Below are positions 4,589-64,000 of a DNA stretch of 64,000 bases, in pieces (positions within the stretch are counted from its first letter, which is position 1; the number at the start of each line of letters is the position of its first letter). A program made the translations under genes and the position numbers. The notes beneath the pieces are model-generated. The model did not search any database and was not told the DNA's origin. It worked only from the letters and a program-made list of their open reading frames with translations. Where the stretch lies: positions 186,001-250,000 of the IMG/VR virus record IMGVR_UViG_3300025141_000016; one strand, given 5' to 3'.

Positions 4589-7500
4589 TGCCCAGGCCCT
4601 CCCATAAACGAGTCGCCCGTCGTTACGCTTCCCGCACCGCGAGTGAAGCAGAGAGGTTCCCCCACGGTCCCAATGGCCCCAAGGCCGATGAGTGGTTCAG
4701 GGCATGGAGAGCACGAATAGGCCCCTACATGAGAGGAGCCTGTTACGACTTGGCGGGGTTCCTTCACGATGAAGGCGGGTTTCCCGTATGGGGGGTGATT
4801 GATGAAGACGGTATCATCGCCCACGCCTTCGCGTACAACCCCCGCATCCGAAAGGGCTTGGATGCTCGGGGTGAGGTAGACCCCGAAGATATGATGGATG
4901 GGGTAATCGGTGCCGAAAGTGTCCGTCCCCTGACCAAGAAAGAGAACCGATCTCTGTGCTCCAGATGGGGCTCCGACGAACGTGACTTCGCCCAACAGTT
5001 CGGGAAATACCTTTGGGATTTACGGGGGAGTCGTCTCGGAGCAGCCTTACGCACCGCGACCTCTACCAAGATCCCCGCAAAGACTGTCTACGCAGGGGGG
5101 TGGGAATGGAACAAGGGAGGCTTCGCGGACTGGCCTTCATTCCGACGCAAGCCCAAAAGAGAGCAGATCGCGTGGGCGAAGGAATACGTTGGCTCTGGTA
5201 TCCGCGAGCCCGTTGAGGTCACCGTGTACTCGGACGGGGGCGTGGGGTTTACGGACGGCCACCATCGAGTCATGGCGGGAACACTGCTCGACATTGAGAT
5301 CCCCGTGCGGGTCAAGTCCCGCAACTTCGACAAAGACCTGTGGCCTGACCTCCTTGCTCTGTTGAAGGCTGGGTACACACCCAAGCAGTACAACCCGCAG
5401 GGGTGGAAGCTAACCAACTCCGGTGTGCCGCCCCTGGAGGTTGTTCGCCGTGGTCCCAACGCCGCTGACGAATGGATCATGTCGAACGAGAGGGTCAAGA
5501 CCGCAGCCCGTCCCATCCGTCTCCCGACACGGGAGATCAAGGCTCTCGCCAAGAAGTTGGCGCAGCGGCTCTACCAGTGGGGGCTGCCGAAGCCCGGTCG
5601 GGTGATCGCACAGGAGTACCTGCCTCTCACCAACGTCATGGGTGACGAGGTGGAGGTCGAGATTCTACTGACGGGTACGCCCAATAAGTGGCGTGACCCG
5701 TTCAGCAGCGAACTGGTCCAAGGCGGATTCGCTCTGACGCATAAGAGGTCCGATAATCCTTTGGTGCGGATCTTTGTGAACCCGGACTTGGGCACCCGGA
5801 CGTTTGAGATGCGACCTCGCAGGATTGTCGAGAGCGAGTTGTACGAAATCCTTGCTCACGAACTCACCCATGCCGCAGACACATGGCTGGGCAAAGGCTC
5901 GGCGGTGGGCGCACTGGAAGGGCTGGGGCCGGGTTCCCACCACAACCACCCGGCAGAGGTCAAGGCACTGATGCGGGACGTGGTGACGCACCTTGAAGAT
6001 GGCGAGTACGTCCGCGAGTTGATGGGCTACGGCATGGACTTCAACACGGCTTTCCGCGAGGCACTGAAGGAAACCCAGTGGCCGGACATTGAGCCCTACC
6101 TGACTCCGAAGAACCAGAAGACCATCCTCAAAGGGGTCTACACCCACCTCCAAGACCAAGGGCTCACCAAGGCCGCGAGCAGGACCGCTGGAGGGTTCCG
6201 TCGGATCATTGATGAGATCGAAGACAAGACAGGCTTGGAGGCCAAGGTCGAGGCCGGGGCTGACAACATCAAGATCGAGTTGAAGCGCGGGACGAAGATA
6301 GTCGGCTACTTCCGAGCCTCGACGGTAGACCCAAACAGCTTCCAATGGAAGGGGGCTCCTCTGGACTGCAAAGAGGCGTGGGGTCAGATAGGGGAGCCGC
6401 CAGTCTGGATTGTCCGAGGAGCCCTGCTGAGTTGGTGGCTCCGAGGCAAGGGGTTCGGCAAGCTGCTCTACAAGGCATTGTTCTCCCACATCGCCTCCAA
6501 GAAGGGCGTTGTGGGTCCGAACCGTTGCTCCGGGGGAAACACATCACCGGATGCACAGCGGGTCTGGAAAAGCCTACGCTCGATGTACCCGAAGCATGGT
6601 CCCTTGATCGACTTGCGGAAGATGGCATCAGCCAGCCGAGTAGCCTCCCGGTTCCGCAGGATGGAAGCGGGAATGAGGACCGTCAAAGACCTTCCTGACG
6701 ACTGGTACGTCGAGATCACCGGTTCACTGTCGAATCTCGGCATCTATCTGCTGGACGGTGATGACAACACCGTAGGAAGTTTGGACATCCACCGGACAGG
6801 GGACTTCCTCCAAATCAACGAGATTCAGGCACGTCAGGGGTGGGGGCCGCTTCTTTACGATCTGGCTATGGAAGTCGCAAACGAGTTCAATGACGAGGGA
6901 CTAATGCCCGACCGTTCCTCGGTTTCGCGTGAAGCACGGGCGGTCTGGGAGCACTACCTCAATCGCCGTTCGGACGTTGAAGCGACCCTCTTGCCAGAGT
7001 GGGTACATGAACTCGCGGGTTCAGGGCACGTTCGCACACACTTGGACCGATATGAACCTGATTCCCCCCTGTCATACTCTTACCGGAAGACCACTGGAAA
7101 CCCGTTCATGCGGCAACTGGCGCTCCAAGGTCAGTTGGAGTCTGACGATTACTCTTTCGACCTCCCACGGGCCGCCGCCAGCCGTGTCGCCTCCCGGTAC
7201 GCAGGCCGAGCCTACTGCATCTGCTGGCCGACTGACGGATTGCTCTACGTCGAGGTGCCCAGCTACGACCACCTCCGCAATCTGTTGTTGACGCAGAAAT
7301 GGCGCGGGGACGCGCATTTGCGAACGAAGGACGGCTATGTCCCGTACTTCGGTGGCGGCATCGCCTTCAGCTTCACGAAGATGCGGATGAAGGGAGTCCA
7401 CCCCGTCTGGTACATCCGCAAGGGCTTCACAAAGCAACAGGCCGTGGCCCATCTGGTGGAGGATGGCTTGTTTGTGAGCGAGCGAGACGCGCTGCGTCAC

Positions 7501-10613: not shown

Positions 10614-11824
10614 CGGACCCGTAGGGTCAGGAGAAACTAACCATGTCCAAGACCATTACCGCTTCTGACCGGAGCCGATTGATTCGACTCGCTTCAACAA
10701 TGTCTGCTGGCTCTCCCGAGCGGAAGGCCATCCTCGCTGGGTTGTCAAAGACCGCTGGAGAACACCCGCTGGGCCGCATGGCAATCGTCTACTTCGATTT
10801 GATCATTGAGGCTTACAACATTGAGGAGGACGCGGAAAACGGTGACGAGTTCGCACAGAGCCTCATGGATGATGGTGGTCGAGGTATGAACAAGTTGGAG
10901 GGTGACGCTCTCAAAAACCTGTCCCGCATGTTCGGACAGCGAATCAGCAACGAGGGGCATGGCCCCGACGGCGCACTTGTCTGCAAGTTCCCAGTGAACT
11001 CGTGGGCAGAGGTCAAGAAAGCCAATGACGTAATCAACAAGAACCACACTGGCGGTGACGATAACATCGACACGGGCGTTCAGTACGTTGAGGCACGGGA
11101 CTTTCGCCTCCACCCGGAGGGCGTGGGACAAAATCAGGCTTTCTACGGTGAGCACTCCCGTGCAGAGGGTGATTGGGACGAGTGGCTGTCCGACCACAAG
11201 TAATCCCTATCGGACCCGTAGGGTCAGGAGAAACTAACCATGCCCAAGACCATTACCGCTTCTGACCGAGCCAGCTTGATCCGGCTCGCTTCCTGTCTAC
11301 CCGTAGAGCGGAAGGCAATCCTGGCTGGGCTCCAGAAGACGGCAGCCATGGAGCCGTGGGATTCCCCCGATTACGTCTTTGAAGACCCAAAGGATGAAGA
11401 TGACTACATCACTCTCTTTGAGGAAGGGACCACACGCCACTACGATGTGAACGTCTCTGGCCGCGTGGATTCAGCGAAGGATGGGCTCCTCCTACTCCAC
11501 AAGGAGTTCGGTCGTGGGGGTAAGGAAAGCCGCGACTTTGAGGGTCAGTACCTCTGGGGGACAGGCTACTCCATCACAGCGATCCCCCCAAACAATCTGT
11601 CCTATGAGCGGTGGCATAACGACAAGGCCCACTTGGCAAAGATCCACAAGGTTCTGGACAGGATCAAGAAGATGCCAGGAGTCAAAAAGGTCAGCTTGGA
11701 GGAACGGCCCGACAGTGCAGACCTGCATAAGAAACAAGGGCAGGCCATGAAGCGGTGGGTCGCCAAGGGTCGGACCCTGCGAACTGCGAAGAAGACACCC
11801 TATCGGACCCGTAGGGTCAGGAGA
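10608..11824 (+). repeat. three exact 27-nt leader repeats CCCTATCGGACCCGTAGGGTCAGGAGA
   Basis: Copies at 10608-10634, 11205-11231 and 11798-11824, each followed by ATG and a tag-A coding sequence; internal hairpin GACCC-GTA-GGGTC. Confidence 0.95.
10643..11203 (+). CDS. tag-A protein, hypothetical cargo
   Basis: MSKTITASDRSRLIRLASTMSAGSPERKAILAGLSKTA. Confidence 0.85.
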   Translation: MSKTITASDRSRLIRLASTMSAGSPERKAILAGLSKTAGEHPLGRMAIVYFDLIIEAYNIEEDAENGDEFAQSLMDDGGRGMNKLEGDALKNLSRMFGQRISNEGHGPDGALVCKFPVNSWAEVKKANDVINKNHTGGDDNIDTGVQYVEARDFRLHPEGVGQNQAFYGEHSRAEGDWDEWLSDHK

Positions 11825-12244
11825 TACACCATGCCCAAGACCCTCACCGCAACTGACCGATCCCGATTGATCCGGCTCGCTTCCACTATGGCTGCTGGCT
11901 CTCCCGAACGGAAAGCGATCCTCGCGGGCTTGGAGAAGCAAGGGGGTGCGTCGAAGACGGCCTACAGCGACAAGTTTGGTCTTCGGTTCAACTTTCGGGA
12001 CGGTTTCTCATTCACGACGGTCCCTGTTGACCCCCCCTACAACCAGACATATTCGGGCTTTATCCTGATAAAGAAGCCCGGACGGGTGAAGGCGTACAGA
12101 GCGGCGATGGCCTACGTCAACCAGAACCGTAGGGAGATCGAACGCATGAAAAGAACAAAAGATGTTCTCGGTGCCATCAACGACTACGCCCGTCAGGTGA
12201 GCGGTAAGGAGCCCTACTGGCACCGATACCTGATGCCAGACTGA
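11240..12244 (+). CDS. double tag-A protein (in-frame fusion of two cassettes; internal start at 11831)
   Basis: Tag A at the N-terminus and again at ATG 11831, which has its own leader repeat and RBS. Confidence 0.85.
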   Translation: MPKTITASDRASLIRLASCLPVERKAILAGLQKTAAMEPWDSPDYVFEDPKDEDDYITLFEEGTTRHYDVNVSGRVDSAKDGLLLLHKEFGRGGKESRDFEGQYLWGTGYSITAIPPNNLSYERWHNDKAHLAKIHKVLDRIKKMPGVKKVSLEERPDSADLHKKQGQAMKRWVAKGRTLRTAKKTPYRTRRVRRYTMPKTLTATDRSRLIRLASTMAAGSPERKAILAGLEKQGGASKTAYSDKFGLRFNFRDGFSFTTVPVDPPYNQTYSGFILIKKPGRVKAYRAAMAYVNQNRREIERMKRTKDVLGAINDYARQVSGKEPYWHRYLMPD

Positions 12245-12259
12245 TTAGGAGATCCCACC

Positions 12260-12784
12260 ATGCCCAAGACCATTACCGCTGCCGACCGATCCCGATTGAT
12301 CCGGCTCGCTTCCTCGATGCCCGTAGGCTCCGATGAGCGGAAAGCCATCCTCGCTGGGTTGAGGGTTGCTGACCGCGCTATCGACAAAGCCGTGGACTAT
12401 CTGGTGAAGGCCCAGCGTATTCTCTCGGGAGTCCCCGGATGGGGCACTGCTCCGTATGGGGGGTATGACCGCTCCCTGACCGAGTTGATCAAGGTCTTAC
12501 GGGCCGGACCCAACAAGAAGGCTTCAGCTTCGTTGAAGGATGTGCTGCGAAAGTGGCCCGAGTTTGCCCCCGAGATCCAAAAGGAACTGCGAGGGCTGCG
12601 GGCGGCGTTGCGAGGCGACCCCGACTTCGGGCGCGTGAGTAATGCCCTCATACAGATCCAGATGCGGCTGGAAGACGACCACCGCAGAGACCCAGCGGCT
12701 TTCCATGCCCGCGCACCCTTCAACAAAGCACTCGCTGACTTTGCAAAGGCCGAGTACGAACACAAGACGGGCAATAAGTGGTAG
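12260..12784 (+). CDS. tag-A protein, hypothetical cargo
   Basis: MPKTITAADRSRLIRLASSMPVGSDERKAILAGLRVA. Confidence 0.85.
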   Translation: MPKTITAADRSRLIRLASSMPVGSDERKAILAGLRVADRAIDKAVDYLVKAQRILSGVPGWGTAPYGGYDRSLTELIKVLRAGPNKKASASLKDVLRKWPEFAPEIQKELRGLRAALRGDPDFGRVSNALIQIQMRLEDDHRRDPAAFHARAPFNKALADFAKAEYEHKTGNKW

Positions 12785-40974: not shown

Positions 40975-40989
40975 ATAGACGACCTACCG
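40975..40989 (-). promoter_or_regulatory. class L promoter motif
   Basis: CGGT-AGGTCGT-CTAT, 29 nt before ATG 40946; back-to-back with the 40999 copy. Confidence 0.65.
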
Positions 40990-40998
40990 CCCCCCAAT

Positions 40999-41013
40999 CG
41001 GTAGGCCGCCTAT
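40999..41013 (+). promoter_or_regulatory. class L promoter motif
   Basis: CGGT-AGGCCGC-CTAT, 43 nt before ATG 41056. Confidence 0.65.
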
Positions 41014-45504: not shown

Positions 45505-48500
45505 ATGGCACCCTTCCCCCAGCGTCTTCGATGCCAGGAGGACGGTGACTTCTACTTGATGGATCTGGCGAAGGATACCTTCGTTCACTTCACGCCCCCC
45601 GAACGGGCCGAGCAGATCATCCGGTCAGGTAAGTTGCTGATGCGACCGCCGTACAAGAAGTTCGGGATCGACGCGGTGACGGCGGTGTCAGCGGTATGGG
45701 GTAGCTTCGTACCCGGTGTGCAAACCACCCACAGCAAGCGTGATGATCTTGTCGCGGTGGTGTTTCAGACCAGAACTCTTCCCCAGGTCGGTCACCCCGA
45801 GGAGGTCATCTGGAAGCGCGATGTGGCTCTCGTCAACCCCAAGATCGTGTCCTACTCCAAGGGCAAGGGGATGCTGCGAAGTGGGTTCGACGGTCAGGTC
45901 TACTACTCGATGCCCTCGTGGTGCGATGGGGTCGAGAGTCGAACGGCCTCCCTGCTTTGCAATCCCAATGCTCTCTCGGGAGCATGGATTGACCCCACGG
46001 GGAAGGTATACGAGATACGGCGTGGGCTGACACATGACCAGTGGGCTGACGACCACCTCACCAACGACAGGGAATACCAGCAACAGATGTGGGATGTTGG
46101 TGCAGGTTCTCTCCTCCAAGATCGAGGATGGGTCCGGTTCGTCAACTTCATCAACATGGCTGTTGGAACCCGACCCTCTCGGGCAGCGATGGAAGCGGCT
46201 GCTGACCTCGTAGCTGATTGTGTGCTCTCCAGGCGTGATGTTGACCCCGAGAAGGACACCCTTTGGCTTGAGACGGGGCCGATGCCCCATGCCCGTGAAC
46301 TGTCTATATCCACCTTCATAGAGGAATACGGTTCCAAGGCCACGGAGGAGAAAATGTGGGAAGGTTTGCTGGCCCGCTTGGCTTCCCGAGTCACTGCTCG
46401 TTATCTCGATGCCGCCTGTGGTCCGGTGCCTCGGATCGTGGTTGCAGCCAACCTCAAAGCGTTGAAGCCGAACGACTGGCTGACCGTCTACCACGGCACT
46501 ACGCTGTCCACGGCCCCGAAACTACTCAACGGGTTCGACTCTACGAGAGTCAAGTCCCGACAGTTCGGGGGGCCGCGTCATAAAGGGCTGTTCGTCACCC
46601 CCACCTTCCGCACGGCACGCAACTTCGCCTCGTATGGACCAACCGTGCTGGAAATGGTGGTCCGGGCCAAGAACCTCCACGGCACGGACTACTCCGGGGT
46701 CACTGGACGGGATGATCCCAGAAGGGAAGAGATTTGGCGAGACAAGTACCCCGACTCCTTTCGGCCTTACTTGTCCCAGACATTGACACAGGGACATGAA
46801 CCGCAGGCGCTACTTCAAGGGCTCGTCGCACCGCGCCAGATCAAACGGGTTTGGCACGCACCGGGCCAGAATGAGCCGGGACAGTGGTATTCCCGTAAGG
46901 AGTTCCTCGATCTGGGGCTGGACCCCTCGGCCAACCCACGGGACAAGCAAGACCCCCTGCGGGATCTGGGCATTGACCTCTCCTACCCCAACTACGACTA
47001 TGACGAGTTCATAGAAGCCCTCGGGGTAGCCTATGGAAAACCCGGCAAGCCAATGAGCCGTGAACGCATCGAGAAGACGCTCACCATGCACGCTGAAATC
47101 TCGATGATTCCGGGGCGTTCTGACACATTACTGGAACTGATTGAGGGGGCGGGGTTCCAAGGACGCGCAGCACAGCGTTACGCCGACCGATTCCGTGAAA
47201 CCCTCGCTCAACAAAGCCGAGAGGTTGCCGCCAGCGCAAGTCGAGTCGCTGCCCGCTACCTCGTCGCAGACTGCAATCTGCGGCTTCCCTCTCATTCATG
47301 GATTGACCCCAAGGGGAAGGTTCATTTGGTTCCCCTTATGCACGATGTCTGGGCCGAGGAAAAGATACGATCTACGCCCTCGATGCTGCGTTCGTTTGTG
47401 AAACGCTACAGGGAATACTATCCCGATGAACTCTATGAGATCGACCATCCGTGGACCAGTTTTCTGGTTGACCAAGGTTGGGTGAGGGTGGCGAACTTTC
47501 TGAACTTTGAGGGGAGAGATCACCTTGTTTCCCCGCACGCTTGGGAGTCAGCCGCAGACCTCATCATCAACTGTGTGGTCAAGAAGCAGCTTGACCCCGA
47601 GACTACTGTCGTGACGGTCGCTGGATATGGGAAGCAGCGATACTCGGTGTCCCAGATCGTCAGGGAATGGGGTGGGCGCAAGGCCGAGGATCGGTTGTTT
47701 GGGGCACTCATGGCCCGCACCGCTGCCCGACTTTGGTATCACGGGACTGAAAAGCGTTTTGAAGAGTTCAAGACCTTTGAGAGCCACACGTTTGGGTCTG
47801 ACCCCTCCGAAGTGCCTCTGTTCTTCTCGCCCTCCAAGTCCTTTGCAAAGATGCACGCCCAAGGACCGAAGGGGGTCATCTACACGGCGCGGCTGAAGTG
47901 GCGCAAGGTGTTTGATAGCGCCAACTTGTATCGGGAATCTCGGTACTGGCCCCCCGAACGTGACGCTCTGACCCAAGAGGGGAAGGCCCTGTACGACGAC
48001 CTCGTAGGGGGCAAGGTGTTTCCCGGCATTGATGAAGACGATCTGCTTGACGGGTATCCGAGTCTTTGGTCGCAGGTGCTCCGTATGGATTACGATGTGA
48101 TTGAAACGACGGAGTTCAAGCGGTGGCTCAAAAAGAACGGTTACGACGCGGCTTATGTCACGGGAGATGGTGAGCAGAACGTGTTTGTCTTCTCCCCGAG
48201 ACAGGTCGAGGTTGTGGGCGTGCAAAGGGCCTCCGCATCCGTTTCTGCTTCCCGTGTCGCTGCTCGCCATCCCGTCGTGGACATTGACCCCAGCAAAGTA
48301 AAGTTCAAGATCCGATCCAGTAGCGATGCTGTGGCTGTGGAAATGCGGTATGGCGGTAAGCGCATTGGCGGCATGAACGCCCACAAGGTCCGTTATCCAG
48401 AAGAGAAGGACTGCCCTCGGGACGTTACCGCGTTGGCTGAACGCTTCCCCGAGTTGGTGACGGGAGAATGGAAGCGCAGCGATGGTGAGGTGTGGCGATA

Positions 48501-49248
48501 CATCACCGCGCTGGCCGTCTTCAAAGCGTTCATCACCGAGGAGGAGTTTCGGGGGTATGGGCTCGGCAAGAAGATGTATAAGGCACTGATGGGGGCTTGG
48601 TTCAAGAAGGTCGGACCATTTCTTTTCATGCCCTATAAGTGTGACGGGGGTTCGGGCACGTCACCAGACGCGATGCGGGTTTGGCACTCTTTAGCCAAGG
48701 AGTTTCCATCAAGTGGCGACGTGGTTGCGGTGATGAAGAATCCGCGTGTGGCTCGGGGGCAGTTACCCCAGTACCGAAAGAGGGCACACACCCCCGACTC
48801 CAGCGAGGAGGTCGAGAACTGGGTGGATGACTTTGGGCGGGAAAACAACTACACGCCTGGAACCTGTGACCTCAACCGTGGCGACTGCGACATGATGTCA
48901 AACGTCTTCGCGGACTGGTTTGAGGACCAGACTGGCGTGGGGCTTCAGATATGGGCCGGTCAGGGGTTCATCCCTCCTCTCGGGAAGGATGCCAATGACC
49001 TCTGGGTCATGCTTTCGGGGGACAAAGCCCACAAGAAAGGCGAGAAACCCCTCTCCCATGTGGTCGTCGTCTGGGGGGATTGGGTCATTGACCTTACAGG
49101 TCGTCAGTTCGGTTCCAAGTACAAGGCCCCTGTGTACTCTCTTTCGGAGTTCAAGAAGCGGTGGGCCACCGTTGGGAAGGCCCGTCGGGCTGACCGAGGG
49201 ATCAACAACCTCCGACGGATGATGCTCCAGAACTCCAGCGATTGGTAG
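45505..49248 (+). CDS. polyvalent polyprotein: three ART-like domains, two WIDPxG repeats, GNAT, papain-like; tag-B linkers
   Basis: FVHFT...EEVIW; VYHGT...GLFVT; WYHGT...LFFS...GYDA; FRGYGLGKKMY; GDCD...SHVVV...VIDLTGRQF; linkers SRVTARY, SRVAARY, SRVAARH and RTA. Confidence 0.85.
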   Translation: MAPFPQRLRCQEDGDFYLMDLAKDTFVHFTPPERAEQIIRSGKLLMRPPYKKFGIDAVTAVSAVWGSFVPGVQTTHSKRDDLVAVVFQTRTLPQVGHPEEVIWKRDVALVNPKIVSYSKGKGMLRSGFDGQVYYSMPSWCDGVESRTASLLCNPNALSGAWIDPTGKVYEIRRGLTHDQWADDHLTNDREYQQQMWDVGAGSLLQDRGWVRFVNFINMAVGTRPSRAAMEAAADLVADCVLSRRDVDPEKDTLWLETGPMPHARELSISTFIEEYGSKATEEKMWEGLLARLASRVTARYLDAACGPVPRIVVAANLKALKPNDWLTVYHGTTLSTAPKLLNGFDSTRVKSRQFGGPRHKGLFVTPTFRTARNFASYGPTVLEMVVRAKNLHGTDYSGVTGRDDPRREEIWRDKYPDSFRPYLSQTLTQGHEPQALLQGLVAPRQIKRVWHAPGQNEPGQWYSRKEFLDLGLDPSANPRDKQDPLRDLGIDLSYPNYDYDEFIEALGVAYGKPGKPMSRERIEKTLTMHAEISMIPGRSDTLLELIEGAGFQGRAAQRYADRFRETLAQQSREVAASASRVAARYLVADCNLRLPSHSWIDPKGKVHLVPLMHDVWAEEKIRSTPSMLRSFVKRYREYYPDELYEIDHPWTSFLVDQGWVRVANFLNFEGRDHLVSPHAWESAADLIINCVVKKQLDPETTVVTVAGYGKQRYSVSQIVREWGGRKAEDRLFGALMARTAARLWYHGTEKRFEEFKTFESHTFGSDPSEVPLFFSPSKSFAKMHAQGPKGVIYTARLKWRKVFDSANLYRESRYWPPERDALTQEGKALYDDLVGGKVFPGIDEDDLLDGYPSLWSQVLRMDYDVIETTEFKRWLKKNGYDAAYVTGDGEQNVFVFSPRQVEVVGVQRASASVSASRVAARHPVVDIDPSKVKFKIRSSSDAVAVEMRYGGKRIGGMNAHKVRYPEEKDCPRDVTALAERFPELVTGEWKRSDGEVWRYITALAVFKAFITEEEFRGYGLGKKMYKALMGAWFKKVGPFLFMPYKCDGGSGTSPDAMRVWHSLAKEFPSSGDVVAVMKNPRVARGQLPQYRKRAHTPDSSEEVENWVDDFGRENNYTPGTCDLNRGDCDMMSNVFADWFEDQTGVGLQIWAGQGFIPPLGKDANDLWVMLSGDKAHKKGEKPLSHVVVVWGDWVIDLTGRQFGSKYKAPVYSLSEFKKRWATVGKARRADRGINNLRRMMLQNSSDW

Positions 49249-58823: not shown

Positions 58824-59135
58824 GTGTACCGATTATGGATTGTGGACCGGGATCTGAAACCGACCGTGCTGAGTGCGGCTTACCTGACCGTCCATGAGGC
58901 GATGGGGTCGGCAGCGCGTTTGATGAAGGGGTTTGGTGCCCCGGCGTTGGATGCCAGGAACATTCTGATGTGGGCAGGGAAGCCCAGCCTTGTGGTCTTT
59001 GACCCCACCTTTTCGGTCGTTGTGTCGGCGGTCATCGAGGGAGGTCAACTGGTGTCGAGTGGTGACGATCCTGTCCCCCTTGATCCTGACGACAACGTGG
59101 GTCCATGCCAGACGACCCCTTCAATCTCCGAGTAG
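58824..59135 (+). CDS. hypothetical protein
   Basis: GGAGG RBS before GTG. Confidence 0.5.
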   Translation: MYRLWIVDRDLKPTVLSAAYLTVHEAMGSAARLMKGFGAPALDARNILMWAGKPSLVVFDPTFSVVVSAVIEGGQLVSSGDDPVPLDPDDNVGPCQTTPSISE

Positions 59136-59150
59136 CGGTAGGAGCCCTAT
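59136..59150 (+). promoter_or_regulatory. class L promoter motif
   Basis: CGGT-AGGAGCC-CTAT, 29 nt before GTG 59179. Confidence 0.65.
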
Positions 59151-59178
59151 AGGTTCCGAGGGGTCAGGAGCCCTCATC

Positions 59179-60201
59179 GTGAATCACCCGGACCCCAAAC
59201 GAGTTGCTATCGCTGTGTCTCCGCAGCATCAGGCGGCTCGGGTAGCGGCTCGCTACGCCTCCTCCCCTCTGATAAAGGAGTTGGAGGAAGACTACCATTC
59301 CCTCTGGCATGACAAGCATGAAAGGGAGGACGGAAAGCCTCGGCTGTGCCCACTGAAAGCTGGGGTGCCCGATTGTGAGAAGATGACCCTCAAAGAGTTC
59401 GTTGCCAAGTGGAAGAGGCACGGGCTGAAGGCGGTAAAGGTCCAACGGCTTCCTACCACCTACTCCTACTATGACTGTGGGAGCCACGCCACGCTGCGGA
59501 CGGAACAGATCCATGGCAGCCGACTTTACCCCCAAGGCGACATCACGGTTGACTTGAACACCCCCATTCCTTGGAGCAAGGCGAAGAAAGGCGACTGGGT
59601 TCAATGGCCATGGCACCACGGAGTGGTGATTGATCCCAAGCGCAAGATTGTGGAGAGTTGTTGGGGGGTAGACGGATGGGTGTTTCAACACCCCGTAGAC
59701 CTTTCTACTTATGGGGCGAAGCCTACGGTTCATTCCGTGCATCCAAAAGAGAAGACCAAGACCGCCAGTTCTGATGGTCAGTGTATCGTCGGAGGCCAGT
59801 GCTTCCGCTACGCTGTCATGTGGGATGGCAAAGGCCCAGGATCATCCCCTGACGACATTGTTGTTCACGGGAACGTGCATGGCTTGGTCGGTCCTCACGC
59901 CTGGGTCGAGCGGAAGGACGGTCGCGTATTTGACTGGCAGACGGTTGAGGGGATCTGGGAGACGCTTGGCCGTCAACCTGACCCCAGCTACACCAAGCGC
60001 GGCTGGCCGAAGCGTGAGTTCTACGCGGAGTTCAAGCCGCGCAAGATGAAGCGGTACACCGCCGAAGACGCGCTGATCAACGGGATACGGAACCGGCACT
60101 ACGGTCCCTGGGACGCGGATGAGGAGTACCGTCCTCCAATCCGATCAGCATCGCGGGTTGCCGCTCGCTACTTGATGGCTTCTCGGCGGCAACGCCGGTA
60201 G
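59179..60201 (+). CDS. tag-B protein with two papain/transglutaminase-like (Cys-His-acid) domains
   Basis: AARVAARY; YDCGSHA...HHGVV...VESCWG; KTKTAS junction; GQCFRYA...PHAWVE...VFD; C-terminal SASRVAARY. Confidence 0.75.
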   Translation: MNHPDPKRVAIAVSPQHQAARVAARYASSPLIKELEEDYHSLWHDKHEREDGKPRLCPLKAGVPDCEKMTLKEFVAKWKRHGLKAVKVQRLPTTYSYYDCGSHATLRTEQIHGSRLYPQGDITVDLNTPIPWSKAKKGDWVQWPWHHGVVIDPKRKIVESCWGVDGWVFQHPVDLSTYGAKPTVHSVHPKEKTKTASSDGQCIVGGQCFRYAVMWDGKGPGSSPDDIVVHGNVHGLVGPHAWVERKDGRVFDWQTVEGIWETLGRQPDPSYTKRGWPKREFYAEFKPRKMKRYTAEDALINGIRNRHYGPWDADEEYRPPIRSASRVAARYLMASRRQRR

Positions 60202-60210
60202 CTTCTTTAT
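60196..60210 (+). promoter_or_regulatory. class L promoter motif (TTAT variant)
   Basis: CGGT-AGCTTCT-TTAT, 34 nt before ATG 60244. Confidence 0.55.
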
Positions 60211-60243
60211 CTCTCCGATAAGGTCAAGTACCGGAGACAACCC

Positions 60244-60693
60244 ATGTCCAAGACCCTTACTGGATCTGACCGTAAACGCCTCATCCGCCTTGCTTCTACC
60301 CTCCCCACGGGGTCAGATGAGCGGAAGGCTATCCTTGCTGGGCTTCACCATGTCGCCGTCCACAAGACCGCCTCCAAGAAGACCACCCTCTCGGCAGATT
60401 TGAAGTTGAAGGACGGGACCGTGTACGCGAAGGGATCGCGTGCAGAGGTGTTCTTCTCGGAGCGCAACCCCTCCATGTCCGAGGTGGAGATTGAGGGTAG
60501 GAAGATCAAACTCCGCACGGTCAGTCTCCACAAGTACCTCCGTGGTTTTCCAAAGCCCCCCTCCACGAGAGCCTTGCAGAAGATGGACAGTGAGGCTTCC
60601 GGGCCAACGGTCAGTGGGGTACGCAACGTCGAGATGGACGGCTATGGTCCCGATGGGTCACCCTCGTGGATGCTGGCCATGGGGCTCATCTGA
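60244..60693 (+). CDS. tag-A protein, hypothetical cargo
   Basis: MSKTLTGSDRKRLIRLASTLPTGSDERKAILAGL...HKTAS. Confidence 0.85.
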   Translation: MSKTLTGSDRKRLIRLASTLPTGSDERKAILAGLHHVAVHKTASKKTTLSADLKLKDGTVYAKGSRAEVFFSERNPSMSEVEIEGRKIKLRTVSLHKYLRGFPKPPSTRALQKMDSEASGPTVSGVRNVEMDGYGPDGSPSWMLAMGLI

Positions 60694-60773
60694 CCCTGTG
60701 CGCCTCGGTGGTCGCTCCGTGAAGGGGGTCAACCACCTACCGAATGTCCGTAGAGGGCACAACGGAGAATGGT

Positions 60774-61229
60774 ATGAGCGCATCCCCCCAGAAAGTAGCC
60801 GAGCGGTGGGCCTCCGAAGCCAAGTTCTTCCGTGGCCTCCACAGTCGCAACAAGGGCATCTTCTTTCGTGGGGCCAAGAACCCCGGTGCCGGTGGCGGGG
60901 CTGGCTTTGGTGCTCTGGGACGTGGCCTTTATCTCGCGTGGGACAAGGGGATCGCCCAGTTCTTTGCTGACCGAGCCGGGGGTCAGGTATACGCCTACAA
61001 GATTCCGTCCAGCCTCAAACTGCTCGATGCCCAGAGCAGCGAGATGGCGACGATCAAGGAAGGGATGGGATTCAAGCCCTGGCAGTATTCAGACGATCCC
61101 ATGTACGCCGCTGTCGTCACAGCCGAGGTAAAAGACCTTGGATACGACGGGGTGATCTCCGACAAAGCGGCAGATGGCCTTGTCTTGTTCGATCCCCGTA
61201 AAGCGAAGCTGGTGGACCTACCGGAGTGA
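60774..61229 (+). CDS. tag-B ADP-ribosyltransferase-like protein
   Basis: SPQKVAERW; FFRG...LGRGLYLA...GYDGVI...LVLFDP. Confidence 0.7.
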   Translation: MSASPQKVAERWASEAKFFRGLHSRNKGIFFRGAKNPGAGGGAGFGALGRGLYLAWDKGIAQFFADRAGGQVYAYKIPSSLKLLDAQSSEMATIKEGMGFKPWQYSDDPMYAAVVTAEVKDLGYDGVISDKAADGLVLFDPRKAKLVDLPE

Positions 61230-62384
61230 TGCAGCGACGGCGTAGGACTCGCCGGGAGCCTCGTCCAGAAGCCCCTGCTCACAGAGGTATGCGATTGCGC
61301 GGCGGGTGTCGGCAGCGTCGAGCCGGAGGTCTGACTGGATTTCCTCGCGGGTTGACCATGGCTCATCGGCCACGAGCCGCAGGATGCGTTCGGCGTTTCC
61401 AACGGTGACTGGACCGTCACGAAGAGACTTGCGAACTCGTCCGGCAAGGTGGGCTGCTCGGAGGGTGGAGACACCTTCGCTGGCAGCGATCTCATCGCGG
61501 GTAGCCCCAGCGATCAAAGCGTCGTAGACCCGCTGATAACGCTCGGCGGCTCCTCGGTGGGCAGCACGGACGAGAGCACGACCGCCTGTGGTCTGGATTG
61601 TGTCTTCGTCGGTGAGGATGAGCATATCTTCCGGGCTCGGGCTCCGAGAGATGATCACCTCATGGAGATCATCCTCGTCTCCCTCGTAGGCGACTTCCCA
61701 CTCGGTCCCCTGGTTGGCCCGCTGGCAAACGTACTCGGGGGATTCTGTCTCGACGCGAACTCGGATCTCGTGCTGGGTCCGTGCCCCACGCATCCGAGCG
61801 AGGGGTTCTGCGCCTCGGACGAAGACGCTGGAGAAGTGCTTGCGCTTCAGAAACTTGTAGAGCGTGGAGAGCGATACGGTGCCTTTCTCGGCCAGTGCCT
61901 TGTCGAAGGTGCCACCTGCGGCCCATTTGGCGATCCAGAGCCCCGTCAACGAGAGACATTCGGCGTAGTCTTCGGAGGGGTAGTCGCGGGAGAGCAGCGC
62001 GGCGAGTCGGCGGTCCAGGGCGCGGTCGCGCAGTTGGGCTTCCAGCCATTCTGATGAGGTCAGCGGTGCGGCTTCATCGACCAGGGAGGAGAGGTGGGTC
62101 GTCACCGTCTCGTGGTCGTCTGACCGGAGGTGGGAGAGCAGCCCAGCCGCGTCACCCTGGAGAGCAGACCAGAGGTCAGCGCAGAGGAGGGCTTGTGAGC
62201 CGGTGCCCCGGTAGCCGTTCTGGTTCACGGAGTCGCGTCGAACGATACTCCGTTTGCGGGCCGTGGCTTTGGCGAGGTCGGTGATCCCGGCTGCGACCAG
62301 CGATTCAACTTCGCTGGGAGTCTGGGGGGAAGCACCGTGGATGAGATCGAGCAGGGAGAGCAGGTATGAGAGTCGTCGGGTCAT
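61218..62384 (-). CDS. sigma-factor-like protein (region 4 HTH) with an extra C-terminal winged helix
   Basis: PSPEDML...RVYDALIAGATRDEIAASEGVS...RVRKSLR; STREEIQSDLRL...LCEQGLL. Confidence 0.6.
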   Translation of the reverse strand: MTRRLSYLLSLLDLIHGASPQTPSEVESLVAAGITDLAKATARKRSIVRRDSVNQNGYRGTGSQALLCADLWSALQGDAAGLLSHLRSDDHETVTTHLSSLVDEAAPLTSSEWLEAQLRDRALDRRLAALLSRDYPSEDYAECLSLTGLWIAKWAAGGTFDKALAEKGTVSLSTLYKFLKRKHFSSVFVRGAEPLARMRGARTQHEIRVRVETESPEYVCQRANQGTEWEVAYEGDEDDLHEVIISRSPSPEDMLILTDEDTIQTTGGRALVRAAHRGAAERYQRVYDALIAGATRDEIAASEGVSTLRAAHLAGRVRKSLRDGPVTVGNAERILRLVADEPWSTREEIQSDLRLDAADTRRAIAYLCEQGLLDEAPGESYAVAASLR

Positions 62385-62497
62385 GGGATTCCTTGGAGTT
62401 CCGATGCCAGCAAGCTGGACAGGATGGGTGAGTGGTTTTTGGTCGAGGACGGGGACGGTGCTCTTACCGAGCGGGTCAAGGTCTGCGACTTCTCAAC

Positions 62498-62526
62498 ATC
62501 CTATCCGCCGTGACCCTATGGGTCAA
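62498..62526 (-). promoter_or_regulatory. sigma70-like promoter for the 62384 gene
   Basis: TTGACC-N17-TAGGAT. Confidence 0.45.
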
Positions 62527-62625
62527 CCCCACCTTGGCCATCAAGTGGATCGAAGTGGGCCAGATGCGGCCCCGTGCCCCATGCTTATTTTTTGGCGGGG
62601 GGATCACCCCTGATCAGGGTGGTGT

Positions 62626-62640
62626 CGGTAGGTCGTCTAT
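62626..62640 (+). promoter_or_regulatory. class L promoter motif
   Basis: CGGT-AGGTCGT-CTAT, 45 nt before ATG 62685. Confidence 0.65.
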
Positions 62641-62684
62641 CTGGGTAGTGGGGGTAGAAGAGAAGTCCCTTTGGAGAGATCCCC

Positions 62685-64000
62685 ATGAATCGCTACGCTG
62701 CCGCTTTGGTTCGTTTGGCGGTATCCCTGCCGTCAGGGAGCCGTGACCGCCGAGTGATCCTTGCTTTGATCAAAGAGGCGGGAGCCCGTGAGGATTTTCT
62801 GGCTCGCTACGAGTTCCTTGGGGGGCTCACCGGCAAGTCGGGTGATCGGGTCAAGAGTGATCTGAAGCAGGGCGACTACGAGCCGTATGTGAAGGCACTT
62901 GCCGCTAATGGCTGGGACGAGGGCACCGCACAGCGCCCCGGAGAGGCCCTTACGTTCGTTGACCCCACGGCCAACATGGGGCTGTGGACGGCTTTGGTGA
63001 GGGGCGGAAACTCGGCCTTGGGCCGTGCCGTGGACGAGGTGGCCAAGTGGCAACCTGCCCTGTCAGGAATCTCTGGTGAGGATGTTGCCCAGGTACTCTC
63101 ACACGGGGGTCAACACTGGCCTGGGATGCGCTTCGACTCTCGCGTGAAGAATGAGAAAGGTGGCTTTGGTGATTATGTCGAGCGCGTGAGCGGCGAGGAG
63201 CCCTACGCGACTGGAGACAACATCTTCCGGTCTGTCGGGAAGGAACTGAAGTCCAAGAAGTTCAACCTCGCTTTCATTATCAAGAGGTTGATGGGGATTG
63301 CCCGCAACAAGACGAAGGATTGGGTCCGCTCGGTGGATGCCGGGAAGTGGGAGGGACCATTCCCCGAAACCGAGGAAGGCCAGCAGATTGTCCCGAGGGG
63401 ATACACACCCCCGGACCCTGCTGACATGCTCACCAAGGAGTTGTATCTGAAAGCCATCGATCCCGTGATGAAGCGGGTGTTGGCTGATGCCCCTGCACAG
63501 GCTCGGATTTGGGAGGCTCTGTTGGCTTCCGTCCAGGCCAACAAGAACTTTCTTGGGGTATCCGCGAGAGGAAAGGGGGAGGGTGATGTGACCCTGGAGG
63601 GCACGAAGTTCCGTCCCTTCATGGAGAAGTATTTTGAGGGGCAGACGGATGAAGACGACAACCCCATCCGAATCCCCACCACCCAGAAGATCGCCGCAAA
63701 CTTCCAGAAACTCCTGAAGAAGATGAGGGCTGCGTTGGCGGGTCTTTCCGACGCAGAGTTGGCCAAGGGGCTCCCGAGACAAGACCGTGAGATCCTGAAA
63801 GACCGTGACATAGCGAGTGTCTACTGGTCGGAGGTCCATCGTCGCCGTCGGGCTTTGCTCATTCGTATGGCTTCCACGTTCCCCGTGGGGTCAGAACACC
63901 GCAAGGTGTTGCTCCGGCAGGCATCGGATGTGGGGGCGAAGGACGTGTTGACCGAGAAATCGCTCATCAAGTATTTGAAGGCGACGGGGGATACTGTCTC
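62685..64000 (+). CDS. tag-A protein with a possible ECF-sigma-like domain, runs off the right edge
   Basis: Not in the ORF track; open from ATG 62685 to the window end. Tag A at the N-terminus and at about 63850; SGEDVAQ, RLMGIARNKTKDWVR, KLLKKMRAAL between them. Confidence 0.75.
   Translation, partial: MNRYAAALVRLAVSLPSGSRDRRVILALIKEAGAREDFLARYEFLGGLTGKSGDRVKSDLKQGDYEPYVKALAANGWDEGTAQRPGEALTFVDPTANMGLWTALVRGGNSALGRAVDEVAKWQPALSGISGEDVAQVLSHGGQHWPGMRFDSRVKNEKGGFGDYVERVSGEEPYATGDNIFRSVGKELKSKKFNLAFIIKRLMGIARNKTKDWVRSVDAGKWEGPFPETEEGQQIVPRGYTPPDPADMLTKELYLKAIDPVMKRVLADAPAQARIWEALLASVQANKNFLGVSARGKGEGDVTLEGTKFRPFMEKYFEGQTDEDDNPIRIPTTQKIAANFQKLLKKMRAALAGLSDAELAKGLPRQDREILKDRDIASVYWSEVHRRRRALLIRMASTFPVGSEHRKVLLRQASDVGAKDVLTEKSLIKYLKATGDTV

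What the first reader, a model, noticed from the sequence alone, without database searches (positions are those of the whole stretch)
61218..64000. Divergent pair of sigma-like genes, one carrying tag A twice: a possible virion-packaged sigma factor
Seen: the ORF from 62685 (missing from the track) has tag A at its N-terminus and near 63850. Between them are SGEDVAQ, RLMGIARNKTKDWVR and KIAANFQKLLKKMRAAL, which resemble ECF regions 2.2 (AEDLxQ), 2.3-2.4 (WLxxIARNxxxDxxR) and 4.2. It follows a class L motif. The divergent 62384(-) gene has a sigma-4-like HTH and a sigma70-like promoter. Inference: a sigma made late, packaged through the tag and released at infection could fire the ECF-like class E promoters at once, tying the tag system to the transcription cascade. 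The sigma assignment rests on short motifs only.
Basis: inference. Interest (0 to 1): 0.75.

Follow-up and report, generated by a model that had tools for sequence, protein, structure and literature searches.

The report
Hidden phage sigma factor beside tagged protein
In this uncultured marine giant phage the gene carrying the repeated peptide tag shows no sign of being a sigma factor, while its untagged neighbour on the other strand probably is a very divergent one that standard family searches miss.

Summary
The window is part of a 297-kb marine jumbo-phage contig. Both genes are real and form a conserved divergent pair.

**Tagged gene (62685 to 64121, 478 aa).** It carries tag A twice (residues 5-29 and 388-412). 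Pfam, PHROGs, five structure libraries and profile comparison found no sigma fold. Its parts are tag, unknown core, tag, then a C-terminal winged helix.

**Untagged gene (61218-62384, minus strand, 388 aa).** This is the likelier sigma factor:
- Its full-length structural matches are nearly all sigma factors, though weakly (E 0.05-0.4).
- Its named language-model neighbours are mostly sigma-region families.
- In a co-fold, residues 114-156 dock on the E. coli beta-prime clamp helices (score 0.66, best control 0.00).
- It adds a C-terminal winged helix and has a sigma70-type promoter conserved across relatives.

**Tag A.** It is real: 22 copies in 17 proteins, selected at peptide level, with no known family. 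It is enriched behind a compact motif (GGTAGG-N4-6-[CG]TAT) that also precedes tail-sheath and endolysin-like genes. One such motif lies 58 nt upstream of the tagged gene.

"Packaged sigma" is not supported. Virion packaging of the tagged winged-helix protein stays untested.

The parts
61218..62384 (-). Gene for P0002 (388 aa), a cryptic sigma-like factor without tag A
   Evidence: ORF and coding score. 17 metagenomic homologues. Foldseek top full-length hits are sigma factors. Co-fold with beta-prime clamp helices passes. No tag A hit.
62085..62384 (-). P0002 residues 1-100: confident N-terminal helical domain of unknown role
   Evidence: AF2 pLDDT 84-90. Aligned by Foldseek to the region upstream of sigma-2 in SigA and SigC.
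61740..62072 (-). P0002 residues about 105-215: sigma-2-like region, followed by the invariant RGARTQHEI block
   Evidence: Invariant W113, L123, R126, S145, G148, W150, W154, F160, D161 and R199-I207. Residues 114-156 (61917-62045) contact beta-prime 271-302 in the co-fold. Boundaries are inferred from Foldseek ranges.
61419..61607 (-). P0002 residues 260-322: sigma-4-like four-helix helix-turn-helix
   Evidence: AF2 helices 260-275, 277-291, 296-303 and 307-322, pLDDT 86-90. hhalign is colinear with regions 3-4 of E. coli RpoS/RpoD/RpoH/FliA at P 0.056. No Sigma70_r4 HMM hit here.
61221..61418 (-). P0002 residues 323-388: C-terminal winged helix domain
62498..62526 (-). Sigma70-type promoter candidate for P0002: TTGACC, 17 nt, TAGGAT
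   Evidence: Scan hit. Equivalent TTGACA-17-TAGTGT in L011 and TTGACC-17-TACAAC in L013 upstream of the homologues.
62608..62619 (.). 12-bp perfect palindrome CCCTGATCAGGG, 7 nt upstream of the class L motif; possible operator
   Evidence: Read from the sequence. Not seen in relatives. Function unknown.
62627..62640 (+). Class L motif GGTAGGTCGTCTAT, 58 nt upstream of the P0001 ATG
   Evidence: 18 genome copies against 2.7 +/- 1.4 shuffled, and 12 lie 22-121 nt upstream of gene starts. Like motifs stand upstream of P0001 homologues in L011 and L013.
62685..64000 (+). Gene for P0001 (478 aa; continues to 64121 beyond the window): tag A, core, tag A, winged helix
   Evidence: Homologues only in metagenomes.
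62697..62771 (+). Tag A copy 1 (residues 5-29)
   Evidence: HMM iE 3.2e-12. Conserved in all homologues.
62772..63839 (+).
   Evidence: Invariant SGED.AQV, GG..WPG and SVDAG. AF2 pLDDT mostly 80-95. No match in PDB, AFDB, BFVD or the Atlas. No Pfam or PHROG family.
63846..63920 (+). Tag A copy 2 (residues 388-412)
   Evidence: HMM iE 5.1e-14. A second or third tag is present at this place in all homologues.
63927..64000 (+). Start of the P0001 C-terminal winged helix domain (residues 415-478; ends at 64118 outside the window)
   Evidence: Profile of 15 homologous domains hits ADAR1 Z-alpha at E 3.7e-4 and EutK_C at 1.3e-3. Pfam winged-helix families. The domain also occurs as stand-alone tag-plus-winged-helix proteins in relatives.

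Best explanation
The locus is a conserved divergent transcription unit of a marine jumbo phage in which no RNA polymerase gene was found.

Leftward gene (P0002). It encodes a very divergent sigma70-family factor made of an N-terminal helical domain, a sigma-2-like region, a linker, a sigma-4-like helix-turn-helix and an added C-terminal winged helix. It is probably transcribed by host sigma70 holoenzyme from a conserved TTGAC[CA]-17-TAnnn[TC] promoter. It then binds host core polymerase through the beta-prime clamp helices and redirects it to phage promoters. By inference these are most likely the compact class L promoters, one of which faces it across the intergenic region.

Rightward gene (P0001). 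It is not a sigma factor. It is a fusion of two tag-plus-module units: tag A plus a 350-residue core of unknown fold, then tag A plus a small winged helix. It sits behind a class L motif and belongs to a set of 17 tag A proteins.

Basis of each step:
- Shown: both genes, the tags, the motifs and the synteny.
- Supported only in silico: the sigma fold and the beta-prime docking.
- Inferred: which promoters the sigma reads, and what tag A does. My favoured guess is that tag A is an address peptide bringing late proteins, several of them DNA-binding, to a common site such as the prohead.
For: P0002 as a sigma factor:
- Foldseek top PDB hits over about 366 columns are Thermus SigA chains.
- In AFDB Swiss-Prot, 18 of the top 30 hits are sigma factors (SigC, SigA, SigF, RpoH, sigma-28, sigma-35). 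They cover residues 69-324 or 1-322 at E 0.06-0.4. Of the other 12 hits, 8 cover only the C-terminal winged helix and 4 are RPC3.
- 68 of 100 language-model neighbours carry no family. Most named sets carry Sigma70_r4, r4_2 or r2; three are other helix-turn-helix families.
- hhalign against four E. coli sigmas is colinear over regions 3-4 at P 0.056.
- The co-fold with E. coli beta-prime 220-350 scores 0.66 against 0.00 for the best of 3 controls. That mark was reached by 58 of 80 solved complexes and 2 of 110 mismatched pairs. The interface is beta-prime 271-302 with P0002 114-156, a stretch holding family-invariant residues.
- No Pfam hit to RNA polymerase Rpb1 or Rpb2 in the 297 kb.
- Jumbo phages without their own polymerase are known to carry sigma factors (PMC7824862).
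- The promoter is conserved in two relatives.

P0001 as not a sigma factor. ARN..D..R is not conserved.

P0001 parts: winged helix; stand-alone tag-plus-winged-helix relatives.

Pair conserved in five loci at 36-100% identity.

Tag A.

Class L: it precedes the tail sheath gene, an endolysin-like peptidase and the gene after the portal. It is enriched before tag genes, 5 of 12 against 12 of 245, Fisher p 4e-4.
Against: - No Pfam, NCBIfam or PHROG sigma model hits P0002 or any of its 16 homologues.
- All Foldseek E-values are above 0.05 with TM below 0.3.
- The AF2 model is poor (pLDDT 50-70) over residues 105-260, exactly where sigma-2 and sigma-3 should be.
- hhalign probability is low.
- The co-fold used E. 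coli beta-prime, not the unknown host's, and my own alignment, so the calibration holds only roughly. A pass can reflect learned likeness.
- The genome is estimated to be 67% complete, so an RNA polymerase could lie in the missing part.
- Two other sigma-like genes exist: genome 271749-272357 with Sigma70_r4 at E 6e-15, and genome 107568-108488 with a weak r2 hit. The assignment of class L to P0002 is therefore a guess.
- Class L also precedes a UvrD-like helicase.
- There is no direct evidence on timing, packaging or cleavage.
Confidence: 0.6

Rival explanations
1. The tagged protein P0001 is itself an ECF-like sigma factor that is made late, packaged into the virion through tag A, and injected to fire class E promoters.
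For: - Three short strings resemble ECF regions 2.2, 2.3-2.4 and 4.2.
- A class L motif lies upstream.
- Tag A occurs twice.
- The protein has a DNA-binding winged helix.
Against: - No sigma HMM hit.
- hhalign against E. coli sigmas gives P 0.22 on an irrelevant stretch.
- The model places a beta-hairpin (149-165) between the supposed regions 2.2 and 2.3.
- ARN..D..R is not conserved in P0005, P0006 or P0007.
- The family is unrelated to P0002.
Confidence: 0.07
2. P0002 is not a sigma factor. It is a multi-helix-turn-helix transcription regulator, such as an activator or repressor with tandem helical and winged-helix domains like MotA or RPC34/TFIIE. It acts on DNA or on the host holoenzyme without replacing sigma.
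For: - Only the C-terminal winged helix is confidently assigned.
- PHROG hits are to MarR-like and MotA-like regulators.
- RPC3 appears among the Foldseek hits.
- No sigma HMM hits, and sigma-fold E-values are weak.
Against: - 18 of the top 30 AFDB Swiss-Prot hits are sigma factors, and they are colinear over about 250-320 residues.
- Most named language-model neighbour sets are sigma-region families.
- The co-fold puts the family's invariant stretch 114-156 on beta-prime clamp-helix residues 271-302, with all three controls at 0.00. To my knowledge this is where sigma region 2.2 docks.
Confidence: 0.22
3. P0001 is a DNA replication or partition accessory protein of the surrounding replication module, for example an origin-binding or initiator-like protein with winged helices. 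Tag A is a hub-binding or oligomerisation peptide that gathers proteins at phage DNA inside the cell, not a packaging signal.
For: - Conserved neighbours are a RecD2-like helicase, a clamp-loader-like protein, ribonucleotide reductase and UvrD-like helicases.
- Tags also occur internally and at C-termini.
- Class L also precedes a UvrD-like helicase and ParB-like genes.
Against: - All structural hits are at noise level.
- Tag genes also sit beside the portal, tail sheath and endolysin-like genes.
- One tag protein carries a fusellovirus VP2 virion DNA-binding domain at E 1e-7.
Confidence: 0.15

Closest known systems
Phage-encoded sigma70-family factors of jumbo phages that lack their own RNA polymerase (group 2 of Iyer et al. 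2021, PMC7824862); also T4 gp55 and SPO1 gp28/gp34, named from my own knowledge
   Same: - The phage has no detectable RNA polymerase genes.
- A phage protein is predicted to dock on the beta-prime clamp helices.
- That protein has a sigma-4-like helix-turn-helix.
- The likely role is to redirect host core polymerase to phage promoters.
   Different: - No sigma HMM recognises it.
- It carries an extra confident N-terminal helical domain and a C-terminal winged helix.
- No T4 gp23-type capsid was found, only a weak HK97-type hit, so it need not belong to that phage group.
Capsid-targeting and cargo-loading peptides: the T4 internal-protein capsid targeting sequence, phiKZ-like head propeptides, encapsulin cargo-loading peptides, and the P22 scaffold helix-loop-helix (all from my own knowledge)
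   Same: - One short peptide is shared by many otherwise unrelated proteins of one phage, mostly at the N-terminus.
- It is associated with a late-type promoter motif and with genes next to the portal and tail sheath.
   Different: - The tag is 26 residues long and predicted to be a helical hairpin.
- It also occurs internally and at C-termini, up to three copies per protein.
- No cleavage motif is strictly conserved.
- No sequence match to any Pfam or PDB entry.
- Packaging has not been tested.
Small winged-helix domains of the Z-alpha, EutK_C, FeoC and MarR kind
   Different: Both are appended to phage-specific proteins. Ligand is unknown: B-DNA, Z-form nucleic acid or protein. The two domains were not compared directly with each other.

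Membership tests
Sigma70 family, for P0002 (61218-62384, minus strand) | Sigma-2 domain recognisable by family models (Sigma70_r2 or NCBIfam sigma models) | tested here: not met
   No hit in P0002 or its 16 homologues at E up to 1. The genome scan with PF04542 hits only another gene.
Sigma70 family, for P0002 (61218-62384, minus strand) | Overall sigma-2 / sigma-3 / sigma-4 fold | tested here: inconclusive
   Sigma factors dominate the full-length Foldseek hits, but with E 0.05-0.4 and TM below 0.3. The model is poor over residues 105-260. Named language-model neighbours are mostly sigma-region families.
Sigma70 family, for P0002 (61218-62384, minus strand) | Region 2 helix binds the beta-prime clamp helices of core polymerase | tested here: met
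   In silico only. Co-fold score 0.66 against 0.00 for the best of 3 controls (mark reached by 58 of 80 solved complexes and 2 of 110 mismatched pairs). Interface is beta-prime 271-302 with P0002 114-156. E. coli beta-prime was used, not the host's.
Sigma70 family, for P0002 (61218-62384, minus strand) | Sigma-4 helix-turn-helix (Sigma70_r4 or r4_2) | tested here: inconclusive
   No HMM hit. hhalign is colinear with regions 3-4 of four E. coli sigmas at P 0.056. A confident four-helix unit spans 260-322.
Sigma70 family, for P0002 (61218-62384, minus strand) | Confers promoter-specific initiation on core polymerase | not testable with these tools
   Needs in vitro transcription.
Sigma70 / ECF family, for P0001 (62685-64121, plus strand) | Sigma-2 and sigma-4 domains by HMM, profile or fold | tested here: not met
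   - No Pfam or PHROG hit.
- Genome scans with PF04542, PF08281 and PF04545 do not touch it.
- hhalign P 0.22.
- No fold match in five libraries.
Sigma70 / ECF family, for P0001 (62685-64121, plus strand) | Conservation of the region 2.4-like ARN..D..R residues across the family | tested here: not met
   Replaced by AAKRTLDWM, ARNLANNWM and VFNLTSNFI in P0005, P0006 and P0007.
Virion-packaged (capsid-targeted) proteins, for tag A proteins including P0001 | Presence in virions or proheads, dependent on the tag | not testable with these tools
   Only circumstantial evidence: the class L association, neighbours of the portal and sheath genes, and a VP2-like domain in one tag protein.

The most novel reading that the evidence does not exclude
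Tag A is a new kind of modular address peptide. It is a 26-residue helical hairpin, usable at the N-terminus, internally or at the C-terminus, that loads a late-expressed set of about 17 proteins into the capsid of a marine jumbo-phage lineage. The set includes DNA-binding ones such as P0001 (winged helix) and a VP2-like protein. P0001 would then be injected with the DNA as a transcription or DNA-handling partner of the cryptic sigma encoded next to it.
Probability: 0.22. Interest if true: 0.8.

Novelty: new variant of a known kind. Interest (0 to 1): 0.5.

Why it matters
**A sigma factor that annotation misses.** A protein invisible to Pfam, NCBIfam and PHROGs still shows a sigma-like fold and the expected sigma docking on beta-prime in silico. 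This suggests that jumbo phages scored as having no polymerase and no sigma may hide their transcription factors. It also gives a concrete protein to test, together with two well-defined promoter-like motif classes in the same genome.

**A testable peptide tag.** Tag A is one 26-residue peptide on 17 unrelated proteins. It is statistically tied to a late-type promoter motif and absent from all cultured phages searched. If it proves to be a packaging or localisation signal, it would be a simple portable tag for loading cargo into large capsids.

**Correcting the record.** Showing that the tagged protein is not a sigma factor stops a wrong link between the tag system and the early promoters from spreading.

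Tried and rejected
**Direct family and similarity searches**
- Pfam, PHROGs and NCBIfam on both proteins and on all P0002 homologues gave only winged-helix hits.
- megablast and tblastn against GenBank phages with the locus, P0002 and a tag peptide gave no match.
- The PDB sequence search with the P0001 and P0002 profiles gave nothing beyond winged helices.

**Structure searches**
- VIA-align on the whole P0002 model was swamped by the winged helix and said nothing about the sigma part.
- The Atlas shape searches were uninformative.
- P0001 gave only noise in PDB, the wide PDB set, AFDB clusters, BFVD and the Atlas.

**Profile comparisons**
- hhalign of the P0002 family against the phage's two other sigma-like proteins as single sequences found nothing.
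- hhalign of the P0001 family against the P0002 family found them unrelated.

**Tag A**
- I suspected tag A was a helix-extended-helix (Rho_N or SAP-like) motif. Neither Pfam nor PDB supported this.
- I considered tag A as a phiKZ-like protease site (S-x-E). The E is not conserved, and neither P0001 copy has it, so I did not pursue it.
- I considered a DNA or RNA element under the tag. Codon-position identities rejected that.

**Other checks**
- Rfam on 60000-64000 gave nothing.
- No RNA run holds the locus, so no transcript ends could be read.
- Earlier notes said 27 tags in 20 proteins. The correct count is 22 in 17.
Full report
**Setting**

The window is bases 186001-250000 of a single 297,104-bp virus contig from IMG/VR. 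The contig is linear and CheckV estimates it at 67% complete. G+C is about 60%.

The same sequence is held by several marine metagenome runs. No RNA run holds it. No GenBank phage resembles the locus at the DNA or protein level.

A codon-usage gene finder of my own gives about 257 genes. Pfam models of the two large polymerase subunits find nothing in the contig. A portal gene lies at genome 2986-4707, and the C-terminus of an 1829-aa protein is a tail sheath. A weak HK97-type capsid hit lies at genome 23.5-24.0 kb, and there is no T4 gp23 hit.

**The observation**

The + strand ORF from 62685 is real. Its coding score is 119. It has a GGAG box just upstream of the ATG, and its N-terminus is conserved in homologues. 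It runs off the window to 64121 and is 478 aa (P0001).

Tag A is a peptide of about 26 residues with consensus DRxxLIRLASTLPVGSxERKAILAGL. An HMM built from the first regex hits finds 22 copies with iE below 1e-6 in 17 proteins, mostly at residues 5-35. Five proteins carry two copies. P0001 has copies at residues 5-29 and 388-412.

Pairwise nucleotide identity among the tag copies is 0.63, 0.74 and 0.36 at codon positions 1, 2 and 3. Identical residues share a codon only 39% of the time. The conserved object is therefore the peptide, not a DNA or RNA element.

The tag matches no Pfam family and no PDB chain. It matches no cultured phage. It is rare even among 5.8 billion metagenomic proteins.

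**Is the tagged protein a sigma factor?**

Nothing supports it.
- Pfam and PHROGs give no hit.
- Genome-wide scans with Sigma70_r2, r4 and r4_2 do not touch it.
- A 21-sequence family profile does not align with E. coli RpoS, RpoD, RpoH and FliA (P 0.22 on an irrelevant stretch). It finds nothing in the PDB by sequence.
- The ARN..D..R string is not kept in the more distant homologues. What is invariant there is SGED.AQV, GG..WPG and SVDAG.

Positively, the last 64 residues are a small winged helix. A profile of 15 such domains hits ADAR1 Z-alpha at E 3.7e-4 and EutK_C at 1.3e-3. In related phages this domain occurs alone behind its own tag A, as in P0058 (117 aa) and P0044. P0001 is therefore best read as two fused units: tag plus core, then tag plus winged helix.

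Distant homologues of 770-890 aa carry three tags that bracket other modules.

**The divergent gene**

Four independent but individually modest lines point to a sigma factor.
1. The best PDB Foldseek hits over about 366 columns are Thermus SigA chains in holoenzyme structures, at E about 0.05.
2. In AFDB Swiss-Prot, 18 of the top 30 hits are sigma factors (SigC, SigA, SigF, RpoH, sigma-28, sigma-35). They are colinear over residues 69-324 or 1-322, with probability up to 0.85.
3. 68 of its 100 language-model neighbours carry no family. Most named sets carry Sigma70_r4, r4_2 or r2.
4. hhalign against the four E. coli sigmas gives one colinear alignment over regions 3-4 at P 0.056. The RDEIAASEGVS..RA.HL..RVRK.LR stretch is in register with region 4.2.

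I then used the single complex job. P0002 residues 60-330, with its family alignment, were folded against E. coli beta-prime 220-350. The score was 0.66, against 0.00 for the best of three controls. That mark was reached by 58 of 80 solved complexes and 2 of 110 mismatched pairs. These counts hold only roughly, because my own alignment was used.

The confident interface is beta-prime 271-302, the clamp helices, against P0002 114-156. That stretch holds the family-invariant W113, L123, R126, S145, G148, W150 and W154. By eye it resembles sigma regions 2.1-2.2.

As the tool warns, such a pass shows likeness to solved sigma/beta-prime complexes rather than real binding. Likeness is the question here. 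I therefore rate "P0002 is a sigma70-family factor" at about 0.7.

Against this, the AF2 model is weak over residues 105-260, all E-values are poor, and the host polymerase is unknown.

The two proteins are not paralogues, and P0002 has no tag.

**Regulatory signals**

Two over-represented intergenic elements exist.

The first is a roughly 35-nt element, GGGGGGTTCAACTCNCCCCCCTATCTCCGTATAGG. It has about 25 copies, each directly in front of a ribosome-binding site and an ATG.

The second is GGTAGG-N4-6-[CG]TAT, with 18 copies against 2.7 +/- 1.4 in shuffles. Twelve copies lie 22-121 nt upstream of a gene start, and seven of those at 48-60 nt. It precedes:
- the tail sheath gene,
- an endolysin-like metallopeptidase,
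- the gene after the portal,
- P0001,
- a UvrD-like helicase.

Five of the 12 genes directly behind this motif carry tag A, against 12 of the other 245 genes (Fisher p 4e-4). So "class L is late" and "tag A proteins are co-regulated" both have some support.

Upstream of P0002 the scan finds TTGACC-17-TAGGAT. That is not significant alone. However, TTGACA-17-TAGTGT and TTGACC-17-TACAAC stand at the matching place in two relatives whose proteins are only 36-54% identical. Class L-like motifs face the P0001 homologues in the same relatives.

**Synteny**

In five loci the P0002 homologue is the divergent neighbour of a P0001-family gene with two or three tags. The loci are L011, L033, L034, L035, and L032, whose P0002 copy is 100% identical to the window's. 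The pair is followed by a zinc-ribbon gene and a RecD2-like helicase. On the other side lie a clamp-loader-like gene and ribonucleotide reductase. The pair is a conserved unit.

**Most likely mechanism**

Host sigma70 holoenzyme transcribes P0002 early. P0002 then replaces host sigma on core polymerase through the clamp helices and directs it to phage promoters. I favour class L because one such motif is its conserved neighbour. This is inference only, since two other sigma-like genes exist: genome 271749-272357 with Sigma70_r4 at E 6e-15, and genome 107568-108488 with a weak r2 hit.

P0001 is then made with the other tag A proteins. Several facts are compatible with tag A being an address for the prohead:
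- its position on 17 unrelated proteins,
- its modular use,
- its link to the late-type motif,
- tag genes lying next to the portal and sheath genes,
- a fusellovirus VP2 virion DNA-binding domain in one tag protein, at E 1e-7.

The same facts fit a hub-binding or DNA-localising peptide equally well. None of this is tested.

**Comparison and novelty**

Phage-encoded sigmas in polymerase-less jumbo phages are known (PMC7824862). What is new here is the degree of divergence, the N-terminal domain and the C-terminal winged helix, so this is a new variant of a known kind.

Tag A resembles capsid-targeting or cargo-loading peptides in logic only. It has no sequence relative, and its function is open.

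**Verdict**

The central interpretation, a tag-packaged sigma, is not supported. The sigma is the other gene.

Noticed in passing
window 16296, 17023, 17536, 20248, 21596, 23436, 24659, 25099 (and about 15 more places in the genome): A roughly 35-nt element, GGGGGGTTCAACTCNCCCCCCTATCTCCGTATAGG, sits directly in front of the ribosome-binding site and ATG of many genes, here the minus-strand genes of 15.7-24.6 kb. It holds a G6/C6 inverted repeat and reads as TTCAAC-17-TATAGG or as AAC-15-CGTATA (ECF-like).
   Followed up: partly
genome 271749-272357 (+) and 107568-108488 (-), outside the window: Two further sigma-like genes. The first is a 202-aa protein with a clear Sigma70_r4 domain (E 6e-15) and a second weaker one. 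The second is a 306-aa protein with a weak Sigma70_r2 hit and a region-4-like C-terminus.
   Followed up: partly
genome 285824-287254 (window coordinates 99824-101254, outside the window): A 476-aa protein with two tag A copies carries a Fusello_VP2_Capsid domain (E 1.1e-7, above the Pfam cut-off). By my own knowledge this is the virion DNA-binding protein family of fuselloviruses. The gene lies just after the giant tail-sheath gene.
   Followed up: partly
window 10643-12784: Three consecutive tag A genes (186, 334 and 174 aa, the middle one with two tags) lie directly downstream of a 1519-aa protein and a 445-aa protein with an ART-PolyVal domain. A second ART-PolyVal protein of 1247 aa lies at 45505-49248.
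   Followed up: no
window 62608-62619: A perfect 12-bp palindrome, CCCTGATCAGGG, lies 7 nt upstream of the class L motif of P0001. It is a possible operator for one of the two winged helices. It was not found in the two relatives examined.
   Followed up: partly
window 40988-41013: Two class L motifs stand back to back, GGTAGGTCGTCTAT on the minus strand and GGTAGGCCGCCTAT on the plus strand. They lie between a 314-aa gene and the 1193-aa UvrD-like helicase gene, so this motif class is not restricted to structural genes.
   Followed up: no
window 59137-59150: A class L motif, GGTAGGAGCCCTAT, lies inside the long TTG-started frame 58990-60201. The true start of that gene is probably downstream of the motif, near 59190. 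The tag A gene 60244-60693 follows it.
   Followed up: no
genome about 87360-87400 (minus strand) and genome about 4755-4800: Short in-frame tandem repeats inside genes: a run of (C/A)GGTAGGGA-like 9-mers, and GGTCGA repeated (reading EVEVEV in the tag A gene next to the portal).
   Followed up: no
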